Source: Macrostomum lignano (taxonomy: Eukaryota). Taken from it: DNA of 64,000 nucleotides. Position 1 is the stretch's first letter, and every line of letters begins with the position of its first letter. Location of the stretch: NCBI GenBank assembly GCA_002269645.1, contig NIVC01000084.1, positions 1 through 64,000 of the forward strand. Reading direction: 5' to 3'. Of the stretch, positions 12,398 to 64,000 are shown piece after piece. The notes beneath the pieces are model-generated. The model was given only the letters and a program-made list of their open reading frames with translations. It did not search any database and was not told where the DNA came from. A program made the translations under genes and the position numbers.

Positions 12398-15090
12398 TTA
12401 TTCTGAGAAAAATATTTCAAACGCGAGCATTCCGATTTCTCCACCGCACTTTTCTTTTCTGTTGCCGGGACAGTTCAAGTTGCAGTATCGCTTATTAGTT
12501 AAATAGTCCTCCTTAACGATCTCGTTGCCACAGTAACATTTTGTGCCATTAAGCAGTCCGAAAAAGCTAGCAGTATATTGCTTGTTGCAAATTCTGGCAC
12601 AGAATCTCTGATTCATGCTCACATCAGTGGCAGCCTGGGTGACTAGGATGTTGTTGGAGCCGTCGTCGACGAAGCAACCCACCATTGGTGCTGAAAATGT
12701 TAATCAGTTTAGGTTGCAAAAGACCAGTGTAGCTAGTGACTTTGTGGGGATGGGTGCATTAAGAAATGTTGCTAAGGAGAGAGGGTGCTGTAGGAAACGA
12801 TGCTGTAGGAGAGGGTGCTGTAGGATAGGGTGCTGTAGGAGAGGATGCTGTAGGAGAGGGTGCTGTAGTAGAGTGATGCTGTAGTGGAGTGATGCTGTAG
12901 TGGAGTGATGCTGTAGTGGAGTGATGCTGTAGTGGAGTGATGCTGTAGTGGAGTGATGCTGTAGTGGAGTGATGCTGTAGTGGAGTTGTGTTTCAACAAT
13001 AGCACGCGACGCACCAGGTATCATCAAGCTGGCAGTCCTAACTCCCTTGTAAATTTGCACATAACCCTTTCCGCCGCATGTTTCGGCGGAGCTGCCGGTG
13101 CAGATCGTTTTGCAAAAGGATGGTATAAGTTTGGGTGCCTTAATCCAGTTGCCGCACCAGCACTCTGAGCCCCTTTGTAGTCCGAAGTAAGCGTAGTCAT
13201 TCAAGGCGCATTGCTCAGCGCAGACGTCCGCAGTCATTTTGGATGAGTTGTCTACTTTGTCCTTTAATGGCGCTACTTGTGCGTATGGGGCTTCTGGGAA
13301 GCAGCCTTGGTACTGATCTGAAACAGAAGTAAATAACAAAAAGTGATAGTCTATGTGGCAAACCTTTTACTTCAGTATCGTCAGAACTAGACCCCAGAAT
13401 ATACATGACAATAATGCACTGGCGCACAGGGCATCCTCAATCAGCGAACTCAAAGACCAGTTGCACCTGCGTACTCTTCGGTAGCCTTTGAGATCCCCTG
13501 ATAGAACCCAATTGAACATGTGTGTGAATTCATCAAGCAGAGTATTCAACGGCAGAATCCGCCGCAGACAGTCGCTAAACTGCGAAAAGCTTTTGTTGTT
13601 GCGTGGTAGGAAATCCACACGATTTTTTCGACGCCTAGCTTGTTCTGGAAATGCTCGTCGAGTCAACGGCCATGTTACTTGCGATAGCAGGCTACACATG
13701 TCTCTGAAGCTCGATATGAACCATAGAGTTATGTGTTTTGACTCTACTCTTAATTTTCTCTCTGATTTTTCTTCTTTTTAGAGTGCTTGAGTTTTAAATG
13801 TTGCCAGTTTACTTCTAGAGAGAAATGATACACTTACAGTTTGAGTTGGTCTTGACTGAAATTGTTTTCGAATTGATTTTATTGCGGACCGGATGTAGCT
13901 CAAATGGTGATATTTTGTTAAGTATAGCGCATTTTGGATAACGTATTTAGCACCATGTCAGTCAGCGGTGGAAGAATTATCAAACTGCAGAATTAGAAGT
14001 GCGCTACACTCGCAACAAAAACATTCATTGAAAACTGGTTTCGGTTCAAAATACGCTAAGGAAATACGTATACACTGACCTTTTGCCGGAACCTTGCTTG
14101 TCCGTTTTATAGGCGTTTGGGCACATCAGACAAAACAAATGCTTGCTTTATTTGCAATCCACAAGCTCATAACGCGATATTTTGTAAATTTAAAGCTAAA
14201 AATAAAAAAGACTGGTTTTGCCTAATGCATTGTGAGCGAAAACCAGTCTTTAGCTTCAGTTGACCAACCTAAAAAATGTTTTTTAGGATTACTAGCAATT
14301 TTCGTCCCCAGTTGTAGAGGCAAGAAAAAGGAATTATGCCTGCAGTTTTTACTGTCAATATTGTTAGTTTTTTAGCTATCTAGCCTAAAATATCAGCATT
14401 ATCTTTAAGCTTTGTACTCAACGCCATTCATCACGCGTATCCCTATTAGCCAAAGTTTTTATCACTTCAGCCAAGAATACGTATCCTCATCAGCCAACGA
14501 AGTTTATCCAAATTAACCGACAAAATTCAATGTGAAGATTAGCCCAAACTGCCTAATTATAAAAGCAATAATTTCGTTTTTTGAGTAAAACGACTGTCCT
14601 TAACTGAACTGAGGTAACGCTGATTTATTCAGAGTGAAGCAAAAGGATAAAGCTACACAAATTCAACACAGCTTTCCGTTGCACAAAGTCTCACGGATGC
14701 ATTTTGGGCTAAATGTGCCAAAATAGTTATTTAGCTTGTACGAGCGTATGTTTAATCCTATGTGGACTCATGGCAGTTAATTACTCGCAGTTAAATGTGG
14801 AATTGTCAGCATCTGTAATCTTAAGGCACGATCTCTTTCCTCAAGTTGACCGTAGCGAAAACAAGACAGAAATGAAACTACGAACTACGAGCGTATGTAT
14901 CCATTTTGGCTTCTGTGGTGCAGTTTATGTATTTTATTCACGAGTGATTGTATTTAATTGTAGTTTTCCTGTGCATATGAATTAAAACAACAGTTGGTAA
15001 CTTACGGGACTCGACGTGTGTAAAGAAGTTGGCCAAGATGGCAGCGCTTATCAGCAAGACAGCAGTGCCCGTTGCTAAGGACCTCTGCAT
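12398..15090 (-). CDS. WSC-A: secreted protein, signal peptide + 2 WSC domains (~226 aa); exons 15090-15006, 13317-13015, 12690-12398
   Basis: Exon 1 is MQRSLATGTAVLLISAAILANFFTHVES followed by GTAAGT. Both introns are GT-AG phase 1 and the frame is continuous. Each domain has 8 Cys and a CxCG motif. Confidence 0.88.
12770..12985. repeat. compound minisatellite (15-bp GCTGTAGGAGAGGGT-like and 16-bp GCTGTAGTGGAGTGAT units) in WSC-A intron 2
   Basis: Direct tandem repeats; about 6 imperfect 15-mers followed by about 7 near-perfect 16-mers. Confidence 0.9.
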
Positions 15091-47167: not shown

Positions 47168-48714
47168 TTAGATCTGTATTTTAACTAAATCGAATATCTC
47201 AATTCCATATTCTCCTCCACATTTTTGTCCGTATTGCGCATTCTGACATTGCTGGTTACAAAACTCTTTGCTCACTGGACTTCCACGCGCTATTGTATTG
47301 CCACAGTAGCATCGGTTGCCGTTTGCTAGACCAAATAATTTTTTTCGCTTTTCAAGGCAACTTCTAGCACAATTGTCCTGGTTCATGATTAGAAAATTTT
47401 CTTTGACTTTTTCAGTTAGCACGCCTTCAGTAGGAGACCAATAAAAGCATCCCTTTGAGGGCGCTGAAATGGCGGCATAAAAGTGACTCCGTATTTTTGC
47501 AGCTTACTTGACATTTACCAAAAAAACAGCTCCACTTACCTGGCACCAATGGAATGGTAAGCTTTGGCACTTTGTAGATACTAATGAAATTGCTACCACC
47601 ACATTCTGCCTCTTTATGTGCACCACATCTTCGATTGCATCTATTGAGACCTGAAGCTGGATGACTGTAGATTTCGTTTCCACAAAAGCATTGATTGTCG
47701 AATATTCCGAAAAAATTACTCTCAAAATATTGACATTTTGGCCAACAGAGATTAGGTTCCATTTCAGTATTTCTATGACTCGAAAATTTTAGAGCTCTAA
47801 ACCCATTTGAATTAAAATAGCAACCCACGTAGTCTTCTGAAATGGTTTGATTAATTACAGACATATTACCCTCAGCTGTGTTCATAAAGTACGAGTAACA
47901 GTTAAAAAGCTGCTGCATTTAAGCAAACTAAGAAATCCGGACGAAGCCCAGGCAACAGGGCGTTGTTGCGGCATGCAATTTGTTTTATTAGTGATTGTGC
48001 GCATTCGATAATCAGTGATTTTTCAAGCCTAAAGTGAAGCATTGAATGCGCGTAAAGAAAGGGGGAAATAAAAAGACAAAAATGTACGTTATACGAATCT
48101 AAAAGGTTATACGAGCGTACGAACGTATTTACACCGAGCCGTGAACAACTTATGCGGCAAATTGTCATAGGGAGAGACTGTAACGTTGCGTATTAATGTT
48201 CTATTTAATGCTAGTGCAGTAAATGAATAGAAACTTACCGCTTGGATCTGAAATGAAGGTGGGAACTCAAATTTTTTTTACGTATTTTTGTAAATTTCTA
48301 ATTCTCGTTAACTACAAATGTGAGCAAACCATTGGCATATTTAGCTGCGAACAGATAGATAAAATCGTTTTACTTTTTTGGATATAAAGCTTAACAAGTT
48401 TCAATATCAACTCAATGAAGATTCTCGTTTCAAAGGCTAAAAACAGCTGAATTCTTGTACAAAAATGTTTATTGGCAACGAAACTTCCTATACCTAGTTA
48501 ATCTAGATCTTAGAAGTGAATTGTAGTATTCGGTACTCACGGAAGTTGGCTGAAATGAAGGGCGCAAACTTCAGAATTATGTTAAAGTTTTTAAATGACT
48601 ACACATCAAAAAGCCATTCTCTGAGTAGCTCGTAATACACAGAATCTCACCATCGTCTCCAAAGATGCCTGGAGCAGTAACGAGAAGAGTCAGAGCGAGA
48701 GTATGGAACAGCAT
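47168..48714 (-). CDS. WSC-D: signal peptide + 2 WSC domains (218 aa); exons 48714-48651, 47836-47540, 47463-47168
   Basis: Exon 1 MLFHTLALTLLVTAPGIFGDD; phase-1 GT-AG introns; 8 Cys per domain; AATAAA at ~47101-47106. Confidence 0.92.
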
Positions 48715-52531: not shown

Positions 52532-54150
52532 ATGCGAGCCAACAAGCTTCTTGCTGCGCCGCTGCGGGCAGCCTGCCAGCTGCAAAGTTTGGCTAAGCGC
52601 GGCTGCGTGAAGTGCCTTCGCTTCTTGATGCTAAACGTCGCCAAGATTTCAATCTGCTGCTGTCTCACCATGGCGGCCATGTTTATGCTGCTAGTATTCT
52701 CCACTCTGTTCTACAGCGTCTACATGTCAGTGAAGTACGGCCGGATGAACTCTGCGCCAGACCCGCTTGAAGCGTTTTCCAGCGAATTCGATGAATATGA
52801 TCAGTCAGAAGGCGCGGATTGGAGTGCCCGAAGGCAGCGTCAACGGCTACTAAGGTTGCAACATGACCTGGAGCAGCGCGGCGGCGGTGGCGGCTGGAGG
52901 CGTCGAATTCGACTGACAAAAGCTCGACTCTCCAGAAAGCGACAACGAGTTGCAAAGTCCGATGACTTCGTCGACGAGGAGCCGTTCGTCGGCGAGAACA
53001 TCAACGATGGCCAACTGCAGGATGCGCCGCTGACAACGCAAAAACCTATCAGAGCGATGGAAGTCAAGCCCCGGCATCTGTCACGAAAGGTAAATCTGAT
53101 GAACAGCATGTTGACCTCTCTTAATCATAGCGAAGTTAAAGTCCAAAAATTCTTAGTGGATACTTTTCTTTCTTTAGTACACTAATGCACCCATAATCTT
53201 ACTGAAACTCACAGGCTCGAGACACGCGTGCGCGCTTAAGGCAGCTTGAAGAGGATTCCAGGCTCAAGTGTCGAAACGCCGTGGCAGAAGTTTTTTCCAA
53301 CCCGTTTGCCAAAGTAAAGTATCGCCATGTTGAGCAGGGGGTATGTACCAGCGAAGTTGATATTCTTATCTTGGTCCAGTCGCACTGGTCGCACTACGAG
53401 CGCAGAGAGCTCATTAGGAGCACCTATGGATCGCTGAAAAATGTCAGGGACAGCATTGTCCGATTGGTGTTCGTCACCGGCTTGCCTGAGGGCAGCGGCG
53501 AGCGAGTTGCAATCCTACAAGAAAGCCGCAGTTATCGTGACATTGTTCTCGGCGAGTTTTCCGATAGGGTTTCGAAGAGATTGGAGAAAGACTTTCTAAG
53601 CTTGCACTGGGCCCTGAATTATTGTCCGACGGCGAAGTTTGTCGCCAAGTTATCCGATGACACGTTCGTGGACACGGTGCATCTGGCCACATTTCTTGAT
53701 AGGTCTCCAATGCAGGAGTTTCTCTACTGCAATATCAAGCGCGATCGCAAACCGTTGCCTCGTTTCATGGGTCGGCGGATACTTAGAGGCGTCAAAGCCA
53801 AGATAAAAACGCTGCCGCACTGCGCTTCAACCGGTTTCGTGGCGACATCGTCCAGCTTGGCTCAAATGCTTGGCTGCAGTCAAGCCCTCCATCCGCTCGT
53901 CCCCGGTTGGTCAGCAGGGGACTTCTTTACAGGAGCCGCGGTGACAACAGCGGGACTGAGCCTCGTAGATACCTGGAAAGGGCATGAATTCGGCGAGCTA
54001 AACCGCAACACGGCTTTGCCACCAGTGGCCAACGACTACATCTTCCTGACCGTGCGACGAAAGCCCGACGGTCAATCAATGCCAGGCGACGAGTCCGTAC
54101 AGAGATTTTTGTGGCGAGCCACGTGGAAGTACCTTGTTGCGCAGATCTAA
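52532..54150 (+). CDS. GT31-family (beta-1,3-galactosyltransferase/GlcNAc-transferase-like) type II membrane protein, ~497 aa; exons 52532-53089 and 53215-54150
   Basis: N-terminal TM segment (ISICCCLTMAAMFMLLVFSTLFYSVYM) and stem; phase-0 intron of 125 bp (GTAAAT..CTAAT..CAG); GT31 motifs 'RRELIRSTYG', 'VFVTG', 'ESRSYRDIV', 'CPTAKFVAKLSDDTFV'. Confidence 0.88.
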
Positions 54151-55679
54151 CGAAGGATCACTTGCAAGCAGTAAGAAACTGTGACATTATGAACTATAGT
54201 CGTCTAAAACAGATTATTGACATTCGATTCCATGAGATGTTCATTTAAAGGTTAAAAACTCTAGCTAAAGTCATCTTGGTGTTATATGGTTCTGTACGTT
54301 TTGTAATACGAGCTACAACCGTAAAAATTAATTTTTAGCGAGAGAATCAAGCTATTGACGACTTGCTATTGAAGGGAACTTCGTTGTTTGTTGTTGATTC
54401 GCCCGCCGCAATTGATTGAATTGCTTCCTCCAAGTATCAGTTAGTTGGCTTGGAAAACGATAGATATATACCTTTGAATCGCGACTTCGTCAAAAGTGAC
54501 TTAATTCAATTTTGGCAACACAGTAAACTGAATGGAAAGCTGCGGAGGTGCCAATCTCCTATTTGAAAGCAGATCTAACGAGGCGCCTGACTGACCCACG
54601 CACTTTAAAGGAGACTTGGGACAGGCAGGCTACAGTACAGGCTGGTGAGCCGCTACAGCAGCAGCGTCGTCGCCTGGACGCATTTCGACGGCTCAAATGG
54701 AGGCAGTGTCCACAGTTCCACCCCTATCAGCAGTGGCACGAACACGTGCTGCGCTATGGACCCCTCTGTCTCACCTGCATTGACATTTTCTTGCCTTCTT
54801 GTTCGTTTGTTACACTTTGCCGTTCAGTTTATTTTGCTGCCAAAATTGAAGTTCAAATTGTTGAATACAAACTTTAACCTACAGCTAATTATGTCTACCT
54901 CCAAAACCATATGCACGACTAACCATCGACATGTCTGTTTTATGTATGGGCTGCCAAAAATCTAGTCGCTTGGGAGACTTAAAGTTGAGATTCAAAATGT
55001 ATACTAGCGATTTATTAAACTCGCTGCATCTAATTCGGTAATACTGTCTCTTGGATAAGGTTGTAAGAAAAAGTTTGTTATGAACAATCGATACCATTTC
55101 CATGGCATAACTACGTGAAGTTTTCATTGCGACAGGTCTTCGTTAGAAAAAATGGGTAGCTAGTTTACTTTGAAGTTATGCTTAATTACTTTAACTAGCT
55201 TGTTTATAGGAAGCACTACACTGACGAAATTATATAATTAGCAATATTCTCATACCAACCCCTCCTCACCTCACCTCAACCACGGCTCTAGTAAGGAAAA
55301 CCATGTCATTTTCGGATTAATAATCAAATTTTACTCGGAATTTTAAGCTCGATATTATAAACAAAAGTAGCTCGTAATTTACATTTTTATGTTTCAAAAA
55401 ATGAGTTTTCTTTTGCCAATGGCGTGTATATGCGCACTAAGCTTAATTACATCAGTTTGTTTTTCTATGATTTCCTGAAGCCAAAGAATGCTTCAAAAGC
55501 TTCTTTACAACTCTGGATAACTTTAGGTTAAATGAATAAAAATATCAGTTGATATTTAACGAGTTAATTCAAAAAGTAAAAAAAGCAATTTGGCCAGAGC
55601 AAGCGGGGAGTGCAAATTTAAACAATTCTCACTCTGTGATAAGTACAAACTTTTAACAGAAAGCACTGGTTAGAGAACA

Positions 55680-56146
55680 TTGAATCCAGACTCGTGATAG
55701 CGCTCCATGCTTAATTCCAATCCAGAATCTCATTAGCACTCCATGCTTTCCAATCCAGAGTCCTATTAGCGCTCCATGCTTTCCAATCCAGACTCTCATT
55801 AGCACTACATGCTTTCCAATCCAGACTTCTATTAGCACTACATGCTTTCCAATCCAGACTATTATTAGCAATTCATGCTTTCCAATCCAGACTATTATTA
55901 GCACTACATGCTTTCCAATCCAGACTCCTATTAGCACTCCATGCTTTCCAATCCAGACTCCTATTAGCACTCCATGCTTTCCAATCCAGACTCCTATCCA
56001 GCACTCCATGCTTTCCAATCCAGACTCTTATTAGCACTCCATGCTTAATTCCAATCCAGACTCTTATTAGCACTCCATGCTTTCCAATCCAGACTCCTAT
56101 TAGCACTCCATGCTTTCCAATCCAGACTCTTATTAGCACTCCATGC
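55680..56146. repeat. 33-bp minisatellite (AGCACTCCATGCTTTCCAATCCAGACTCCTATT), ~14 copies, with 36-bp variants
   Basis: Direct tandem repeats; these generate the spurious 11-aa repeat ORFs. Confidence 0.95.
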
Positions 56147-56386
56147 TGTCTAATCGAGCCATATCAAGACTGGCTGCGTGATGCAGTGAAAACAGGAATT
56201 TATTAAGGTTTCTACGAGCTATGTCGTTTATTTTAAGGAGGAATTCAACGTTAAGATAATAAATTTCAAAAAGAAGAATTACAACACAAACTAATAAAAG
56301 ATATAATAGCCTACAACTGTTAGAAACAAAAGTACACACAGAATCGAACGAGCTGTCAATCACAATGGCTCAGAATTTCCAATTGT

Positions 56387-59300
56387 TCAACGAGCACTCG
56401 GCGGTTTCATCTGCATGGTCTTGAAGAAGTCGCCACCCCTGTACTTCTGCGCCGTTTCGGCCGCCTCAGGCCGGACGCGGGGCCCGGCACGCGCCGATGA
56501 TGGCGCCGCGGCGCCTGTGATAACCAGCGACGCCGTGCCGCGATTCCTCGCCGCGTGTTCCTCCGCCAAGCCGGGGGTTGCCTTCGACTTGCGCGGCGGT
56601 TCCGGTGGCAGATTTGAGCTTCCCAGCAGGGATTTGGCGGCGTCGCCGCGGCCTTTGGCTGCGAGCTCCTTGGCTACGTCGGACTTTAGCGCGCGCTCGT
56701 GCGTCTTGTGATCTTTCGGCGGAGCCCGGTAGTCTGTATCGCCTAGGCAACTGTCCATGACGCCCCGGTTGCGTTCGGCCGCCTGTTTAGTGATGGTGCG
56801 ATAGGGGGACAATGGAATCAATTTTTCAGGAAGCCTGGGGCCACCCTGGCGCAAGGCCTTCGGTGACAGCGTCTCACAACCATTGCTGACGGCAATTCTG
56901 CAACTTTGTGCCTTGGGGGTTGGCCCTTATGGGTGTAAAAACCAGGATGAGATCCCGGAAAATTTTGGTGCCTAATTCAGCCTCCAGCCCACCCCCTGTT
57001 GAATGAATTCACACAAAAAATCAATATGGGCCACTCCGTCAGTTAAATGCGCAGCTCTCATATCAGTAGTGCGTTGCAAAAATTGTCAGCAGTTTGTTGC
57101 AGGAAAAATGTTGTAAGAAAACCAGAGTGTCAAGGTACTCAGCAACCTCAATGCTGTTTTGGAGGAAAGCATGCTACTTTTGTCCTATACCATTGATCCC
57201 CCTTGAATCCCATTGATCCCACTCGAATCCTATTGATTCCACTTGAATCCCATGGATTTCACTCAAACCCCATTGATCCCACTTGAATCCCATTGATCCC
57301 ACTCAAGCATCATTGATCCCACTCAAGCATCATTGATTCCACTTAAATCCAGTTAATCCAAATAAAACCCGAGGGACCAAATTAAAAGCACCCTCATTGA
57401 TTTCATTCCCTTTGAAAATACGGATCAATTTCCACCAACCTCCTGGGCGGGCCCCGGACGAACTCTGGGCTGAGGCCGTGGCGAGCTGTACTGCCGGTTC
57501 TGTTCCTGGTTGAACCACTGCGACATCTGGCCTTTGGCTCGGTTGGCGAACTCCTCAGCCTCCGGCCTGGTCTTCCTGACAACCCGAGCATCCGCTGCCT
57601 GCTCGGCCGCCGATGCTGCCGACGAACTCACGCCGATGTGCCCGCGGGTGTTGCGCTGGTACACCTCCTGGGCCAAGTCGCCCTTTACCTTGGCGGCCGC
57701 GACTGGTGGCTCTTGGTGGCTGGCGCCGCGTGAATAATCAAAGCAGTCGCGCATCTGCGAGCCCTGCAGCGATCAGGTTCAATGTTGCAGCGCAGTGAGA
57801 AATTGGGATGGGTGAGATGGGGAGAGATAGTGAGAAACGGAAAAGAGATAGGGGAGAGATTGAGAGAGATGAGGAGAGGTGAGATAAAGGAATTTTAGGA
57901 GAGTGTTTGGCATGAAGCCAAGAAGGAAAGACTATAGAATAAGCTCTTAGTACGAGCTAGAAGATATAAGGAGGAATATCGAATACAGATGATGAACAAT
58001 GAGAGTATTGGCGCTAATGAAGACTCTACCAAAATGTTTCAAATCAACGATAGAGCATCGGCAGCGCTATTCAACTCTCAATTACCTTCGAAGAGGCCTC
58101 GTAGTTGGCCAACGAGCTGCTGGTGGGGCACCGGTGGCCGTATACAGCAACACCATCCTCAGCCGGATCTACTTTGCGCGTCATCCAGTCAGTGCCAGTC
58201 CCGTGCCGGTTCCGCTCGGCGTATTCAGCGCCTTCGCCTCTAGTCCGCGAGGACGGCCGCGTTGAAGGCGCCGTAGTCGGTCGGGCGTCGTGTCGGTACC
58301 AGTCGGCCTGGGAGCGCATCGACCTGGCGATCTCGCGTCCAGCCTCGGATGTGCACTTTGGCCCGGGCGCCGCCTGCGGGTCCGGCTTCTTGTTGTGATC
58401 GAACCAGTCGCCCTCGCGAGCCTGGTTAGCACGCTGCATCAGCTCCACATTAGACGGTGGATAAACTTTAACTGGACGCGGCTTCGGCCTGAACGCGTAA
58501 TTTCCGTGGAAGTCGAACCACTTGTCCTCCTGGTTGTTGAACTTGTCGGCGATGCGTCTGGCGTCCTCGTCGCGCAGTCGAACTGGCGCCGGCGCGTCGT
58601 CCGGCGGCAGGCGGTAGTTGTGGAACACCTCGCCGACTGTCGGCTTGTTTCTGATGGTAAGAAGCAATGCTATGTAGCTAAATAATTTTAACTATAAGCA
58701 GCGATCTAGAGCCAGATAGCAGCTTCCAATTTACACATTTTACTGAATTTACCGCAACTTCGGTTTGATTAAACCGAGTTTTGTTAATTTGGCTTTATCC
58801 GACAAAAATATGCAATACGTATCTAACTGTGGTCACCCTGACATCGTCCTAGCACCAGTTGCGAGGCAATCCTGCTCATTCCGCTGACTCCTGAGAGACA
58901 ATACAGTTACGCAGGCACGCACTCATACATGCTCACGCATACTCATTCACAATCTCACGCATACTCATACATGCTCACGCATACTCATACACAATCTCAC
59001 ACATACTCATACATGCTCACGCATACTCATACACAATCTCACGCATACTCATTCACAATCTCACGCATACTCATACATGCTCACGCATACTCATACACAA
59101 TCTCACGCATACTCATACACAATCTCACACATACTCATACACAATCTCATGCATACTCATACACAATCTCACGCATACTCATACACAATCTCACGCATAC
59201 TCATTCACAATCTCACGCATACTCATACATGCTCACGCATACTCATACACAATCTCACACATACTCATACACAATCTCATGCATACTCATACACAATCTC

Positions 59301-60174
59301 ACGCATACTCATACACAATCTCACGCATACTCATACACAATCTCACGCATACTCATACACAATCTCATGCATACTCATACACAATCTCATGCATACTCAT
59401 ACACAATCTCACGCATACTCATACACAATCTCACACATACTCATACACAATCTCACGCATACTCATACACAATCTCACGCATACTCATACATGCTCACGC
59501 ATACTCATACACAATCTCACGCATACTCATACACAATCTCACGCATACTCATACACAATCTCACGCATACTCATACACAATCTCACGCATACTCATACAC
59601 AGTCTCACGCATACTCATACACAATCTCACGCATACTCATACACAATCTCACGCATACTCATACACAATCTCACGCATACTCATACACAATCTCACGCAT
59701 ACTCATACACAATCTCACGCATACTCATACACAATCTCACGCATACTCACGCAGGGTGTAAAGCAGCCCTGACTTTCTAATCATCAGGCATGTACACTCT
59801 CTGTGTCTTCGGGGTTGACCCGTCGTGAGTTAAAAACGCAGACAACCTCTTAGCCAATTGTTTGGCGCTCACAAGCCACAAATGAATGCGGCCGCGCGCG
59901 GAATCGAACCAGGGATCGCGGCGTGAGAGACACGCCACTCCAACATTCCATGAGTCAAATGGTTATATAAATCAGCTACCCGATGAGATATTTAGCCGAG
60001 AAAAAATATTTTAAAAACGCACTTTTGAGCAATCTCCTGAGCCTCGGGCCGAACCCGCGGCGCTGGCTGCGGCTCTCGATAATCGGCCTTGTGCTGAAAC
60101 CATTGGCCCGGATTGCCGCGATTCTTCAAATAGTTGCTCTGCGCCTGGTCCTTAGACGATTCCACTAGCGCCAT
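56387..60174 (-). CDS. uncharacterised repeat protein R1 (478 aa, ~13 repeats of 35-39 aa); exons 60174-60023, 58650-58086, 57763-57440, 56782-56387
   Basis: GT-AG introns with phases 2, 0, 0 give a 1437-nt stop-free frame. Repeat consensus ~ P.PRVRPEA.E.A.RNRG...W/F. Confidence 0.85.
57189..57350. repeat. 20-bp minisatellite (CCCATTGATCCCACTTGAAT-like), ~8 copies, intronic
   Basis: Direct imperfect tandem repeats. Confidence 0.9.
58850..59950 (-). mobile_element. tRNA-derived SINE related to family 1, carrying an internal minisatellite
   Basis: B box GGTTCGATTCC (minus strand, ~59900-59911). Flanks 58860-58925 and 59745-59800 align collinearly with 19445-19575. Confidence 0.75.
58920..59750. 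repeat. 22-bp minisatellite (TCATACACAATCTCACGCATAC) with interspersed 20-bp variant units, ~38 copies
   Basis: Near-perfect tandem array; it generates the spurious His/Thr-rich ORFs. Confidence 0.97.
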
Positions 60175-60495
60175 GCTAATGTGACTATTGATTAACCTTA
60201 CCTTTAGTATTGAACAGATCACAACTCGAATACACGGCAAGTAAGCAGACACAGTTTGCTGCTCTATCTATTGTACTCGCAGCTCTGAATTCCAACTAGA
60301 CTTAGGAGGCGGGGAGAGGGCTGAGAGGAGGGGCAAAGCAAATGAATGGAGCGACAGTGAGACAGTGCAGCTCTCACGAACACACCTGGCTGCTCAGTGA
60401 CAACCCCGCTCGTAGCGCTCTCCACCATCCCTTTCTCTCTCTCTCTCTCCCGCTTACCGTCACAGTCTTACTACCCCAAAAAGGGTAGAAAGGTG

Positions 60496-60510
60496 GTCCC
60501 CCCTAGCAAC
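60496..60510 (+). promoter_or_regulatory. RFX/X-box-like site in the shared divergent promoter
   Basis: GTCCCCCCTAGCAAC contains the strong half-site CCTAGCAAC; the left half is imperfect. Confidence 0.4.
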
Positions 60511-60917
60511 ATGGGGTTGGCTACAGATAGGGCGACAGTACGCAGCCTCTTTCTATAATGTCTGTCTCTCTTTCTGTGCTCACGCGCATGCAATTTCTCT
60601 CTCCCTCTATTCCAGCAGTGCGCTAAGGCAAAAGCAGCAAAAGGGGTGGCAGCATAACACCGGTAGGCAATAAGACTTAAATGAGGCACTGCAGTCAGTG
60701 TACGTACGTTTTGCTGCTGAGCGATCGAGGCGGCTCCAAGGGTGTGTATTTCCTGCCGCTGTCAAGAAAGCCGGAACGGTCGACCCGAAAGCCGCAGAGC
60801 GGGCGTCTCTCTCTTCACAGTTTATTTAGTCAAACAAATAAGAAAGGCAACAAAGAAGCGGAGAACTTATTTGGAATTTGAACAGCTTTGGACTCCAAAG
60901 CTGCAGCAGATAGTCAG

Positions 60918-62704
60918 ATGGCTTCAATCAGCAGAACAAACGGCAATCAAAACGGCCTGGGCGTCTATGGAAGGACCATGAAAACCTCAGTAGACTTTGC
61001 TGAAGATTACTATCAGCCGGACAAATACGGTTTCAAGCTGCACGGAGCCCCTGAAAGCAACGGTTTTGGCGCTACAACCGAGCCAAAGAAGCGCAGCAAG
61101 CCCATTAAAGTGCACAGCCCGAAGGTTCGCACCGGCTGGGACAAGGCAGCCGTTGTGGCAAACGGTGAACGCTCGCGCAGCAGCGCCGTGAAAGCGAACT
61201 TCGACTACAGGCCAGAGAATGCCGAACGCACCGAGAAGCAGCAGCCAAGGGGCAGCGCCATCGACGGCAGGTTCGCCGAAATCCAGCGCAAGCAGACGCA
61301 CACTGAGATGGACAAAGTACTCAATCCGAGCAAGGAGCGCTTCTACCAGCCAGAGATGAATCCCAAGTGTCCGACCGAGGACAGCAAGGAGTTCTGCAGG
61401 CGCAACCAGAGAGGCACGTACGGATTCATGGAGCCACTCAGGGCCAATTACCCCACGGACGAACCCGGCAAGGTGCGCTGTCCATCCGCAGCGGCCCGGG
61501 AGAATCTGGAGAAGGGCCGCGGAATGGCTGGCCGGCTCATTCACCAAGAGGAGCGGTCGCGCACACCGCCGCCCAGCCTTCGCCTCGGCGCGTCGCAGGA
61601 GACCCGCGAGAACTACGACCGATCGCGCGGCGGCTGCATGTCGGCCGTGTTCAACCAGTCGGAGAACATTCGGGCCGGCGCGCAGGACCCGGCCCCGGCC
61701 GGTCGCGTGATCAAAGGCGAAGCGGCCGAACAGAACGCGTCTAGGAATCGCGGCCAAACTGCGCAGCTGTTTGCGCCCGGTCGCGGCGCTCAGCCGGATC
61801 CGCAGCCGGCGCCGCGCGTGCGGCCTGAGGCGCAGGAGACGGCGGCCAGAGAGGGTGCCGGGATGCGGGGCACCTTCTACGGCGGGCCGCAGACGGAGCC
61901 GCAGCCGGCGCCGAGGGTTCGGCTGGGCGGTGGCGAGGTGGCCAGCAAGCTGCAGGGTACACTGACTAGCGAGCAGTACAACTATCGGCAGATGCCGCCT
62001 GATCCGCCGCCTGCACCGAAAGTGCGACCTGAGGCTCAGGTACGTCTCTCTTTGAGGTGGTGTGAATTAAAAGACGTATTAAACCATACCTATGTAGGTA
62101 CGTGCACTTTTCGGAAGTGAGGCTTTGGTAGAAATTGCAGTTCCCTAGCAACAGATTAGACGGGCCAAATGCAAATTCTCAAATGGGCCTGCTGGGATGC
62201 TAATGCTCAAATGAGTTGATGTGATGCCAATGCTCAAGTGAGTTGATCGATGTGATGCCAATGCTCAAGTGAGTTGATCGATGTGATGCCAATGCTCAAA
62301 TGAGTTGATGTGATTCCAATGCTTAAATGAGGGCTGTTTAGATCCGAAAGTTCTACTAGAAAAATGTTCGAGTCAAAAATCTATTTTACATGTAAAAATA
62401 TACATTATACAATTGAGTCTAAATAAAGTTTTTGTCTCAAAAGGTTTTGCGTGGAAATTTTCGCAAAGTTTTCTTTCCTTTGTATCACACGCAGGAGTAC
62501 GCCAACAGGGAGCGAGCAGTGGTGACAAAGAACCTTCTGCAGAAGTACGGCCAGTTGCCATCGGACTTGCCGCCGAAGCCGCACGTGCCACCGCAGGCGT
62601 GGAACACGGCCTATAGATCGAGGGGCAGCGCCATGAAGGACTGCATCAATCCAAGCAAGCCGAGGCGAGTCCGGCGACACAGGAGGCCCGTTTCCGCGCA
62701 CTGA
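60918..62704 (+). CDS. uncharacterised repeat protein R2 (~443 aa, ~10 repeats), paralogue of R1; exons 60918-62039 and 62495-62704
   Basis: Phase-0 intron (CAG|GTACGT ... GCAG|GAG). Repeats include PQPAPRVRPEAQETA, PPAPKVRPEAQEYANR and EQNASRNRG. The start codon is uncertain. Confidence 0.85.
62140..62152 (+). promoter_or_regulatory. X-box (RFX-binding) motif in the R2 intron
   Basis: GTTCCC-T-AGCAAC fits GTYNCY-N(1-2)-RGNAAC. Confidence 0.5.
62197..62330. repeat. 28/31-bp minisatellite (GATGCCAATGCTCAAGTGAGTTGATCGATGT), ~5 copies, intronic
   Basis: Direct tandem repeats. Confidence 0.9.
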
Positions 62705-62864
62705 GCTGCGTTGGGATTCTAAGAAACGAGCTCCGTTTCTGTTTTTGATTAAACACGCGTGCATTGACAGCTAAATGGCTATGACGCTTTTATACTGCTT
62801 GCAGCGAGCGTAATAACAGGCAGACATATTAATCATCAAAGTTTGAATATGTATAACTGATTTG

Positions 62865-63120
62865 AGGGGTTCGAGCCTGGTGGTTGGGGCGTCGGACTCA
62901 CGACTGAAAGGTCGGGTGTTCGATTCTCGGAACAAATTGTATATTTGAGAAAGACAATTCAGTTCACCCAGCTGTAAAATTAGCATTATCTGGGGTAATT
63001 GAGGGTGTGTGTGGCAACCCCCCCTCAGTCCTTGGACTGAACAGCCGTACGCAGCCTTCAGATGCGCCGCGCAATAGCTGTGGCTGAGCTGTCGGTTGCA
63101 CATCTGCCTATTAGGGCAGG
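62865..63120 (+). mobile_element. CORE-like SINE (family 2), diverged copy with an internal deletion
   Basis: tRNA-like head; CAGTTCACCCAGCTGTAAAA and the 3' body are shared with 40620 and 51751. Confidence 0.85.
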
Positions 63121-63845: not shown

Positions 63846-64000
63846 AGGGGGCCGTAGCCCAGCGGTCTAGCGCAGGCTCTGGTGTGCCAGCGACCCAGGC
63901 TCGATTCCAAGTGCAGTCACATTAATTTGGGGCTGATTTGAAATCTCGGCTTGGCTCTGCTCGTGCAATTAGCGGCCTTGAGAGCCAACCCCCCAAGGCA
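63846..64000 (+). mobile_element. SINE family 1 head (runs off the window end)
   Basis: Near-identical reverse complement of 19585-19735. Confidence 0.92.

What the first reader, a model, noticed from the sequence alone, without database searches (positions are those of the whole stretch)
56387..62704. Head-to-head pair of paralogous genes built from an unrecognised ~37-aa repeat (PRVRPEA..A.RNRG)
Seen: manual splicing gives two stop-free proteins (478 and ~443 aa) whose ATGs face apart 743 bp from each other (60174 and 60918). Both consist almost entirely of one repeat: a Pro-rich extended segment ending in (R/K)(V/C), a short predicted helix 'E.A.(R/K)N(R/K)G', then an aromatic residue (e.g. 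PQPAPRV-RPEAQEIAQKNK, PRPQPRV-RPGPAQEAAERNRG, PAPAGRV-IKGEAAEQNASRNRG). I cannot assign it to a named domain. Established: ciliary microtubule-inner proteins and MAP6/SAXO proteins are disordered chains of similarly sized basic helix-plus-proline repeats that register on the tubulin lattice. Inference: this may be an undescribed, co-regulated pair of axonemal or sperm microtubule-binding proteins driven by a bidirectional promoter.
Basis: partly seen in the sequence, partly recalled or inferred. Interest (0 to 1): 0.8.

Follow-up and report, generated by a model that had tools for sequence, protein, structure and literature searches.

The report
Paired flatworm genes of ENKD1-type repeats
Two neighbouring, back-to-back genes of the flatworm Macrostomum lignano encode disordered, basic proteins made of 10-13 copies of a ~37-residue motif. 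I find the same motif in the microtubule-binding end of the cilium/centriole protein ENKD1, so they are probably uncharacterised microtubule-binding proteins, though that function is inferred and not shown.

Summary
GT-AG splicing gives a 478-aa protein (minus strand) and a 443-aa protein (plus strand) whose ATGs are 743 bp apart. Both match deposited Macrostomum lignano proteins. A repeat HMM built only from other species scores 167 and 84 bits against them, versus at most 6.3 bits for shuffled versions. AlphaFold2 finds no globular fold, only 13 and 10 short helices about 37 residues apart.

There is no match to Pfam (including the MAP6/SAXO family) or to any PDB chain. Each gene has full-length orthologues in trematodes and annelids or in related short proteins; every named free-standing repeat protein is spiralian (flatworm, annelid, mollusc, brachiopod).

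New here: the same motif occurs in the N-terminus of ENKD1, with 3 copies in tunicates, 4 in a ctenophore and 1 degenerate copy in vertebrates. Published work shows that the ENKD1 N-terminal fragment binds microtubules and that ENKD1 is a microtubule inner protein of the ciliary transition zone.

Still untested are ciliary or sperm expression, co-regulation and tubulin binding. The head-to-head arrangement is not seen next to the orthologues of the minus gene examined in other species. The UniRef names "SPM2" and "MAP6" are unsupported.

The parts
60023..60174 (-). Minus gene, exon 1 (ATG at 60174; aa 1-50 and the first two bases of codon 51)
   Evidence: Own splicing, donor GTGCGT. The product is identical to UniRef100_A0A1I8J7B2.
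58086..58650 (-). Minus gene, exon 2 (to aa 239)
   Evidence: Acceptor CATCAG, donor GTAATT.
57440..57763 (-). Minus gene, exon 3 (aa 240-347)
   Evidence: Acceptor CTGCAG, donor GTTGGT.
56387..56782 (-). Minus gene, exon 4 with the stop codon (aa 348-478)
   Evidence: Acceptor AAACAG; the stop codon occupies 56387-56389.
60918..62039 (+). Plus gene, exon 1 (ATG at 60918; aa 1-374)
   Evidence: Donor GTACGT. The product is identical to PAA91524.1.
62495..62704 (+). Plus gene, exon 2 with the stop codon (aa 375-443)
   Evidence: Acceptor ACGCAG.
60175..60917 (.). 743-bp spacer between the two diverging ATGs; presumed to hold both 5'UTRs and promoters
   Evidence: Coordinates. It is 95.8% identical to the other two genome copies, about the same as synonymous divergence, so there is no extra conservation.
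60496..60510 (+). X-box-like (RFX) site GTCCCCCCTAGCAAC with one mismatch to GTNRCC-N3-RGYAAC; weak lead only
   Evidence: 24 such sites occur in the 64 kb on both strands, so 0.28 are expected in 743 bp.
56399..56500 (-). Repeat unit, minus aa 442-475 (SSARAGPRVRPEAAETAQKYRGGDFFKTMQMKPP)
   Evidence: 30.5 bits; mapping.
57485..57592 (-). Repeat unit, minus aa 297-332 (DARVVRKTRPEAEEFANRAKGQMSQWFNQEQNRQYS)
   Evidence: 43.5 bits; mapping.
58161..58268 (-). Repeat unit, minus aa 179-214 (PSTRPSSRTRGEGAEYAERNRHGTGTDWMTRKVDPA)
   Evidence: 39.9 bits; mapping.
61794..61895 (+). Repeat unit, plus aa 293-326 (PDPQPAPRVRPEAQETAAREGAGMRGTFYGGPQT)
   Evidence: 34.1 bits; mapping.
61896..62006 (+). Repeat unit, plus aa 327-363 (EPQPAPRVRLGGGEVASKLQGTLTSEQYNYRQMPPDP)
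   Evidence: 33.9 bits; mapping.
62564..62671 (+). Last repeat unit, plus aa 398-433 (DLPPKPHVPPQAWNTAYRSRGSAMKDCINPSKPRRV)
   Evidence: 31.6 bits; mapping.

Best explanation
The window is Macrostomum lignano DNA. The locus holds two diverging, anciently paralogous genes. Each belongs to its own subfamily of an uncharacterised family; every named free-standing member is spiralian.

Both products are basic, intrinsically disordered chains. Each is a tandem array (13 and 10 units, ~37 aa each) of a Pro-rich extended segment ending in PRV(K/R), a 10-17-residue helix 'PEAxxxAxxN(K/R)G', and a short hydrophobic or aromatic tail.

Shown: the unit is homologous to a motif in the N-terminal part of ENKD1, a centriole/cilium microtubule-associated protein.

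Inferred: each unit is a tubulin-lattice contact. The arrays would then lie along a protofilament, roughly one unit per tubulin dimer, and stabilise or pattern stable microtubules of cilia, centrioles or sperm. This is the way tau, SPM1 and SAXO-type repeat proteins work.

Also inferred, and unsupported by any data here: shared regulation from the 743-bp spacer.
For: Identity and gene models.

Repeat significance with an independent HMM.

Disorder with periodic helices: pLDDT 52-53, pTM 0.16-0.17, helices every ~37 aa. pI is 9.7 and 10.0, with ~15% hydrophobic residues.

Functional constraint: pN/pS between M. lignano genome copies is 0.07 (plus) and 0 (minus, partial) at pS ~0.04.

Family: a repeat profile finds 233 proteins at E<=1e-3 among 1.84 billion representatives. 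The minus protein aligns collinearly over its full length with proteins of Schistosoma mekongi, Calicophoron, Capitella, Dimorphilus and Helobdella. The plus protein aligns with a shorter subfamily.

ENKD1 link:
- Profile hits P0090, P0092, P0124 and P0155 (E 9e-17 to 2e-8 library-wide) carry a C-terminal Pfam Enkurin domain.
- Their relatives are named ENKD1 in Ciona, Styela, Lingula, Polypterus, frogs, birds and fish.
- The spiralian-only HMM finds 3 units in tunicate ENKD1 (up to 51 bits), 4 in Mnemiopsis and 1 in vertebrates (Coturnix 24 bits, Polypterus 22.5 bits).
- The vertebrate unit is positionally homologous to the last tunicate unit.
- It corresponds to residues ~54-83 of the 346-aa ENKD1 chain in PDB 11yj.

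Literature: ENKD1 fragments 1-150 and 1-250 co-pellet with and bundle microtubules, while the enkurin domain does not. ENKD1 is a microtubule inner protein of the bovine transition-zone doublet.
Against: - No direct evidence of tubulin binding, localisation or expression exists for any member of the spiralian family. Identifier searches in the literature and in four Macrostomum supplements found nothing.
- In ENKD1 the microtubule-binding activity was mapped only to 1-150 and 1-250. That stretch also contains a very basic coiled-coil region, so the motif itself has not been shown to be the binding element.
- The mammalian copy is so degenerate that the profile alone does not find it in the PDB sequence.
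- No chain of any solved axoneme, centriole or cortical-microtubule structure matches the repeat. It is therefore not one of the known inner proteins of the model organisms studied so far.
- The spacer shows no conservation above the neutral level and no significant X-box.
Confidence: 0.55

Rival explanations
1. The unit is a short linear motif for a non-tubulin partner of ENKD1, for example another centriolar or transition-zone protein such as CEP41. The spiralian arrays would then be multivalent scaffolds or sponges for that partner rather than lattice binders.
For: ENKD1 forms an 8-nm repeating unit together with CEP41. The motif's own binding partner has never been mapped. Multivalent arrays of short motifs are typical of scaffolds (general knowledge).
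Against: The ENKD1 fragment that contains the motif does pellet with microtubules. The regular ~37-aa spacing, basic charge and helix-plus-extended-linker build are what lattice-binding repeat proteins look like.
Confidence: 0.15
2. The proteins are disordered and have no cytoskeletal role (for example nuclear, RNA-binding or condensate-forming). The similarity to the ENKD1 N-terminus would reflect a shared ancestral disordered segment without a shared function.
For: No expression or localisation data were found. The models are low-confidence. Basic disordered repeats also occur in nucleic-acid-binding proteins (general knowledge).
Against: Motif positions are strongly conserved across phyla and across two protein architectures. 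Purifying selection is strong. This argues for a specific, conserved binding function, and the only experimentally studied carrier is a microtubule protein.
Confidence: 0.2
3. The genes are true members of the MAP6/SAXO (Mn-module) family or of the apicomplexan SPM2 family, as two UniRef names suggest.
For: UniRef labels near-identical sequences 'Microtubule associated protein 6' and 'Microtubule associated protein SPM2'.
Against: - The two names contradict each other for sequences that are 99% identical.
- There is no Pfam hit at E<=10, and Pfam includes the MAP6/SAXO family.
- There is no hit to any PDB chain by sequence or profile.
- The one 'apicomplexan' hit (a Siedleckia transcriptome) is 38% identical over its full length to Capitella, so it is most likely annelid host material.
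- SPM2 itself could not be compared, because no sequence or paper was available.
Confidence: 0.05

Closest known systems
ENKD1 (enkurin domain-containing protein 1), N-terminal region
   Same: It carries the same PRV(K/R)PEAxxxAxxxxG unit: 3 copies in tunicates, 4 in Mnemiopsis and 1 in vertebrates. The unit is found by an HMM built only from spiralian repeat proteins and is positionally conserved. ENKD1 is basic, and its N-terminal part binds microtubules.
   Different: ENKD1 has a C-terminal Enkurin domain (PF13864) and a conserved 'KALWRSxKYxxVESRV' / 'KDHEKENxRRxREIQ' core. The two window proteins lack both and instead carry 10-13 tandem units and nothing else.
MAP6 / SAXO (Mn-module) proteins and Toxoplasma SPM1
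   Same: Same working principle as proposed here: disordered, basic chains of short tandem modules that line and stabilise stable microtubules. SPM1 is described as having six Mn motifs and binding nearly all protofilaments from the lumen.
   Different: There is no detectable sequence relationship: no Pfam hit and no PDB-chain hit. From my own knowledge, the Mn module is a (S/T)xYxxxF-type motif, not PRVKPEA...NRG. The N-terminal Cys-rich segment of MAP6/SAXO is also absent from the first 30 residues of both window proteins (sequence).
Tau/MAP2/MAP4 microtubule-binding repeats
   Same: Tandem ~31-37-aa units in a disordered basic protein. From established knowledge, each tau repeat lies extended along a protofilament and spans about one tubulin dimer.
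   Different: The sequences are unrelated. The tau family has 3-5 repeats flanked by long projection domains, whereas here the whole protein is the array.
Toxoplasma SPM2
   Same: Only the name given by UniRef to the minus-gene product. SPM2 decorates the middle section of cortical microtubules.
   Different: No sequence comparison was possible. All named relatives of the window proteins are animals.

Membership tests
Spiralian PRV(K/R)PEA-repeat proteins (family delimited here; no public name) | Seven or more tandem ~33-38-aa units matching the consensus RPxPRVKPEAxxxAxxNxGxMxxxL | tested here: met
   The independent HMM gives 83.8 and 167.1 bits versus <=6.3 bits for shuffles. There are 8-14 HMM units and 10-13 predicted helices per protein.
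Spiralian PRV(K/R)PEA-repeat proteins (family delimited here; no public name) | Collinear full-length alignment with orthologues in other phyla | tested here: met
   Minus protein: 25-30% identity over 430-518 columns with trematode and annelid proteins. Plus protein: collinear over its C-terminal ~260 aa with the short subfamily.
ENKD1 | C-terminal Enkurin domain (Pfam PF13864) | tested here: not met
   Neither window protein has any Pfam hit at E<=10. The ENKD1-type hits score 50-80 bits.
ENKD1 | N-terminal PRV(K/R)PEA...G motif preceding the basic 'KDHEKEN..R.REIQ' segment | tested here: inconclusive
   The motif is present many times. The adjoining ENKD1 core segment is absent from the window proteins. 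They share a module, not the architecture.
MAP6 / SAXO (STOP family) | Match to the Pfam family for MAP6/SAXO Mn modules | tested here: not met
   0 families at E<=10 for both proteins.
MAP6 / SAXO (STOP family) | Sequence similarity to SAXO or SPM1 chains in solved microtubule structures | tested here: not met
   phmmer of both proteins and hmmsearch of the repeat profile against all PDB chains gave nothing better than E = 0.3, and those were chance SepF matches.
Toxoplasma SPM2 family | Sequence homology to TgSPM2 | not testable with these tools
   No TgSPM2 sequence is available here, and the describing paper is not held. The UniRef name is the only link.
Ciliary/axonemal microtubule inner proteins | Location inside, or on, axonemal, centriolar or sperm microtubules | not testable with these tools
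   This needs localisation, proteomics or cryo-EM. No solved structure contains a matching chain.
Bidirectionally promoted, co-regulated gene pair | Correlated expression, or shared regulatory elements in the spacer | tested here: inconclusive
   There is a single one-mismatch X-box against 0.28 expected. The spacer is no more conserved than synonymous sites. The pair is kept in three M. lignano copies but not next to the minus-gene orthologues examined in four other genomes. No expression data were found.

The most novel reading that the evidence does not exclude
The PRV(K/R)PEA-helix-N(K/R)G unit is a previously unrecognised tubulin-lattice-binding module that is shared across animal phyla from ctenophores to vertebrates. 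ENKD1 carries 1-4 copies. Spiralians amplified it into free-standing 10-13-unit proteins that lie along protofilaments of ciliary, centriolar or sperm microtubules with one unit per 8-nm tubulin dimer. The 12-13-unit protein would then span about 96 nm and could act as a ruler or stabiliser.
Probability: 0.2. Interest if true: 0.75.

Novelty: new variant of a known kind. Interest (0 to 1): 0.5.

Why it matters
If the unit is a tubulin contact, three things follow. It defines a new microtubule-binding repeat that is missing from Pfam and from every solved microtubule structure. It points to which part of ENKD1's N-terminus may do the binding (residues ~54-83 in the human-length protein). It also gives a family of unnamed proteins in flatworms, including schistosomes and other trematodes, annelids, molluscs and brachiopods a testable function. 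M. lignano has RNAi and transgenesis, so the prediction can be tested directly. If the unit does not bind tubulin, the locus is simply a conserved pair of disordered proteins of unknown role.

Tried and rejected
- **Pfam:** scans of both proteins found nothing at E<=10.
- **PDB by sequence:** both proteins singly and the 49-unit repeat profile gave only chance hits to SepF and an enterotoxin at E>=0.3.
- **PDB by fold:** Foldseek of the AlphaFold model gave nothing, best E = 6. This was expected for a model with pLDDT 52.
- **RNA genes:** Rfam and ARAGORN over the locus found nothing, so the tRNA-like stretches seen by eye in intron 1 and downstream of the plus gene are unverified.
- **Word-indexed protein search:** run with the full-length family alignment, it returned only 7 hits because the prefilter saturated. 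The exhaustive profile search was the informative one.
- **Conserved head-to-head pairing:** no second repeat gene lies within 10 kb of the minus-gene orthologues in Schistosoma mekongi, Dimorphilus, Capitella or one further unnamed assembly. In Calicophoron the representatives of the two subfamilies lie on different contigs.
- **Other repeat-bearing genes in the window:** none.
- **X-box/RFX scan of the spacer:** not above chance.
- **Footprinting with the other M. lignano copies:** uninformative at ~96% identity.
- **Literature:** gene or protein identifiers gave no hits. The motif strings gave one hit, an unrelated bacterial dehydrogenase paper.
- **Supplements of four Macrostomum transcriptome papers:** no mention of the three Mlig gene numbers.
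- **SPM2 description (Tran et al. 2012):** not held.
- **Apicomplexan origin of hit P0021:** rejected, because it is 38% identical over its full length to the Capitella protein.

Full report
**1. What is in the sequence**

Region 56387-62704 contains two diverging protein-coding genes.
- My own splicing gives the plus-strand gene as exons 60918-62039 and 62495-62704 (443 aa).
- The minus-strand gene is exons 60174-60023, 58650-58086, 57763-57440 and 56782-56387 (478 aa).
- All four introns are GT..AG, and there are 743 bp between the two ATGs.
- The window is Macrostomum lignano. The plus product is identical to PAA91524.1. The minus product is identical to UniRef100_A0A1I8J7B2 and to residues 20-497 of PAA91523.1.
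- Consecutive accessions (PAA69442/3, PAA91523/4, PAA46200/1) show that the pair is retained in three copies of this polyploid genome.
- Against two of those copies, pN/pS is 0.07 (plus) and 0 (minus, over the part recovered) at pS of about 0.04. Both are therefore functional coding genes.

**2. The repeat is real**

- Iterated HMM building on the two proteins plus six homologues converges on the consensus RPAPRVKPEAEENAEKNRGTAMDWLMHNYGN, with successive units 32-38 residues apart.
- As a non-circular test, I built an HMM only from units of the six non-window homologues. It scores 83.8 bits (plus) and 167.1 bits (minus). The best of 200 shuffles of each protein reaches 6.3 bits.
- AlphaFold2, given family alignments, finds no globular fold (mean pLDDT 52-53, pTM 0.16-0.17).
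- It places 13 short helices in the minus protein and 10 in the plus protein, about 37 residues apart. Confidence peaks on the helices.
- The first ~75 residues of the plus protein carry no unit.
- Both proteins are basic (pI 10.0 and 9.7), rich in Pro and Ala, and only ~15% hydrophobic.
- They are paralogues at 29% identity (E = 3e-9).

**3. Family and distribution**

- Neither protein matches Pfam at E<=10 or any PDB chain.
- A profile of 49 units (alignment A1) was searched exhaustively against 1.84 billion representative proteins. It finds 233 proteins at E<=1e-3 and 119 at E<=1e-10.
- Every named free-standing repeat protein is spiralian: Schistosoma mekongi, Calicophoron daubneyi, Capitella teleta, Dimorphilus gyrociliatus, Helobdella robusta, Lingula anatina, Nucella, Pinctada, Argopecten and Babylonia.
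- One hit is labelled as the apicomplexan Siedleckia. It is 38% identical over its full length to the Capitella protein and is most likely annelid host material.
- The minus protein aligns unit by unit over its whole length with 440-520-aa proteins of trematodes and annelids.
- The plus protein groups with a shorter subfamily (P0018, P0143 and others) and shares its C-terminal units and basic tail.
- The two genes are therefore ancient paralogues, each with its own orthologues.
- They are the only repeat-bearing genes in the window.
- No second family member lies within 10 kb of the minus-gene orthologue in S. mekongi, Dimorphilus, Capitella or one further unnamed assembly. The head-to-head arrangement was therefore seen only in Macrostomum among the genomes examined.

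**4. The link to ENKD1**

- Four of the profile hits (P0090, P0092, P0124, P0155; library-wide E from 9e-17 to 2e-8) have 2-4 N-terminal units followed by a C-terminal Pfam Enkurin domain.
- Their relatives are annotated as enkurin domain-containing protein 1 in Ciona, Styela, Lingula, Polypterus, frogs, a lizard, quail and many fishes. Mnemiopsis also has one.
- Scanning these with the HMM built only from spiralian repeat proteins gives:
  - three units in tunicate ENKD1, up to 51 bits, for example RSARPVPRVRPEAQEVAEKSKGCMGVLFNNYGKPDP;
  - four units in Mnemiopsis;
  - one unit in Lingula ENKD1;
  - one unit in vertebrates: Coturnix 24 bits, Polypterus 22.5 bits, frogs 15-18 bits and teleosts 3-9 bits or none.
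- In an alignment of ENKD1 orthologues the single vertebrate unit lines up with the last tunicate and ctenophore unit. It sits immediately before the conserved basic 'KDHEKENVRRMREIQR' segment.
- In the 346-aa ENKD1 chain of PDB 11yj it corresponds to the degenerate PRGPCIGPGAGEILERGQRGVGDVLLQLEG, about residues 54-83. The profile alone does not reach that copy.
- The oomycete ENKD1-like protein has only the Enkurin domain.

**5. What is known about ENKD1**

- Tiryaki et al. (bioRxiv 10.1101/2021.07.20.453048) report that ENKD1 binds microtubules directly and promotes their polymerisation and bundling.
- In their hands fragments 1-150 and 1-250 co-pellet with microtubules, whereas the enkurin domain (250-346) does not.
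[quoted passage not shown] It spans protofilaments A13-A11 with 8-nm periodicity, together with CEP41.
- The motif therefore lies inside the only part of ENKD1 shown to bind microtubules.
- That fragment also contains a strongly basic coiled-coil segment, and nobody has isolated the motif.

**6. Most likely mechanism**

- Shown: two constrained genes encode disordered basic arrays of a unit that is homologous to an ENKD1 N-terminal motif.
- Inferred: each unit is one lattice contact, with its helix and a basic, proline-rich linker long enough to reach about 8 nm. The arrays would then lie along protofilaments of stable microtubules and stabilise or pattern them. This is how tau, SPM1 and SAXO-type proteins work (SPM1; tau and SAXO: established knowledge).
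- I put about 0.55 on this.
- Rivals:
  - the unit binds another ENKD1 partner rather than tubulin (0.15);
  - a non-cytoskeletal disordered protein (0.2);
  - genuine MAP6/SAXO/SPM2 membership (0.05).
- Whether the site of action is cilia, centrioles or sperm is open.

**7. Comparison with the known, and the UniRef names**

- UniRef%-identical sequences 'Microtubule associated protein SPM2' and 'Microtubule associated protein 6'.
- These names contradict each other. I take them to be machine-predicted (my inference).
- MAP6/SAXO membership fails the tests I could run: no Pfam hit, no hit to any PDB chain, and no N-terminal Cys-rich segment.
- SPM2 could not be compared.
- ENKD1 membership also fails, because the window proteins have no Enkurin domain and no ENKD1 core. 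The relationship is a shared module, not a shared architecture.

**8. Promoter and co-regulation**

- The 743-bp spacer has one X-box-like site (GTCCCCCCTAGCAAC, 60496-60510) with one mismatch. There are 24 such sites in the 64 kb, so 0.28 are expected in the spacer.
- The spacer is 95.8% identical to the other genome copies, no better than synonymous sites.
- No expression data could be found. Co-regulation remains an untested idea.

**9. Verdict**

'Microtubule-lattice repeat protein' now rests on homology to a module of a real centriole/cilium microtubule protein rather than on a general resemblance.
- Tubulin binding, ciliary or sperm expression and shared regulation are still inference.
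- The MAP6/SAXO comparison is analogy only.
- I found no description of the repeat in Pfam or in the searched literature, and every named member of the family is annotated only as hypothetical or uncharacterised.
- I rate it a new variant of a known kind (repeat-built microtubule-associated proteins), of moderate interest.

Noticed in passing
window 57190-57350, 58932-59749, 62169-62331, 55683-56155: Three of the four introns of the two genes carry a minisatellite: a 20-mer x8 in minus intron 3, a 22-mer x37.6 in minus intron 1, and a 31-mer x5.7 in the plus intron. A 33-mer x14 array lies just beyond the 3' end of the minus gene. The 22-mer array is about 2.1 kb in the other genome copies L005 and L006 against 0.8 kb here. 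The mechanical ORF 55653-56018 is just the 33-mer array read in frame.
   Followed up: partly
window 60022/60023, 57439/57440, 62039/62040 (exon-intron junctions): Three of the four introns interrupt a repeat unit inside or at the start of its helix, at nearly the same place: PEAQEIAQK|NK, PGPAQE|AAERNRG and RPEAQ|EYANRE. The orthologues in Capitella (L003) and in one ENA assembly (L004) are single-exon genes.
   Followed up: no
window 12524-12537: This is the only exact match in the 64 kb to the RFX X-box consensus GTNRCC-N(1-3)-RGYAAC (GTTGCCACAGTAAC). The neighbouring gene was not examined.
   Followed up: no
window 53281-54150 (+), 52532-53185 (+), 47427-47918 (-): Upstream neighbours of the locus include an ORF with a Galactosyl_T domain (PF01762, E = 2e-20), preceded by a 217-aa ORF with a hydrophobic N-terminal stretch and no Pfam hit. 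There is also an ORF with a WSC domain (PF01822, E = 2e-11). In the other genome copy L005, a Neurensin-domain gene lies ~2.2 kb downstream of the plus gene.
   Followed up: partly
protein P0021 (EukProt 'Siedleckia nematoides' transcriptome): A family member filed under an apicomplexan is 38% identical over 469 aa to the Capitella protein and 42% identical to another unnamed member. It is probably contamination from the polychaete host.
   Followed up: partly
UniRef100_A0A1I8GEM9 and UniRef100_A0A1I8J7B2 (products of copies of the minus gene): Two 99%-identical proteins carry different functional names in UniRef (SPM2 versus MAP6). No domain or homology evidence that I could reproduce supports either name.
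   Followed up: yes
window 59880-59960, 62860-62925, 63850-63925: By eye these stretches look like tRNA-derived (SINE-like) sequence, for example GGTTCGAGCC...GGTCGGGTGTTCGATTCTCGG. ARAGORN and Rfam report nothing there.
   Followed up: partly
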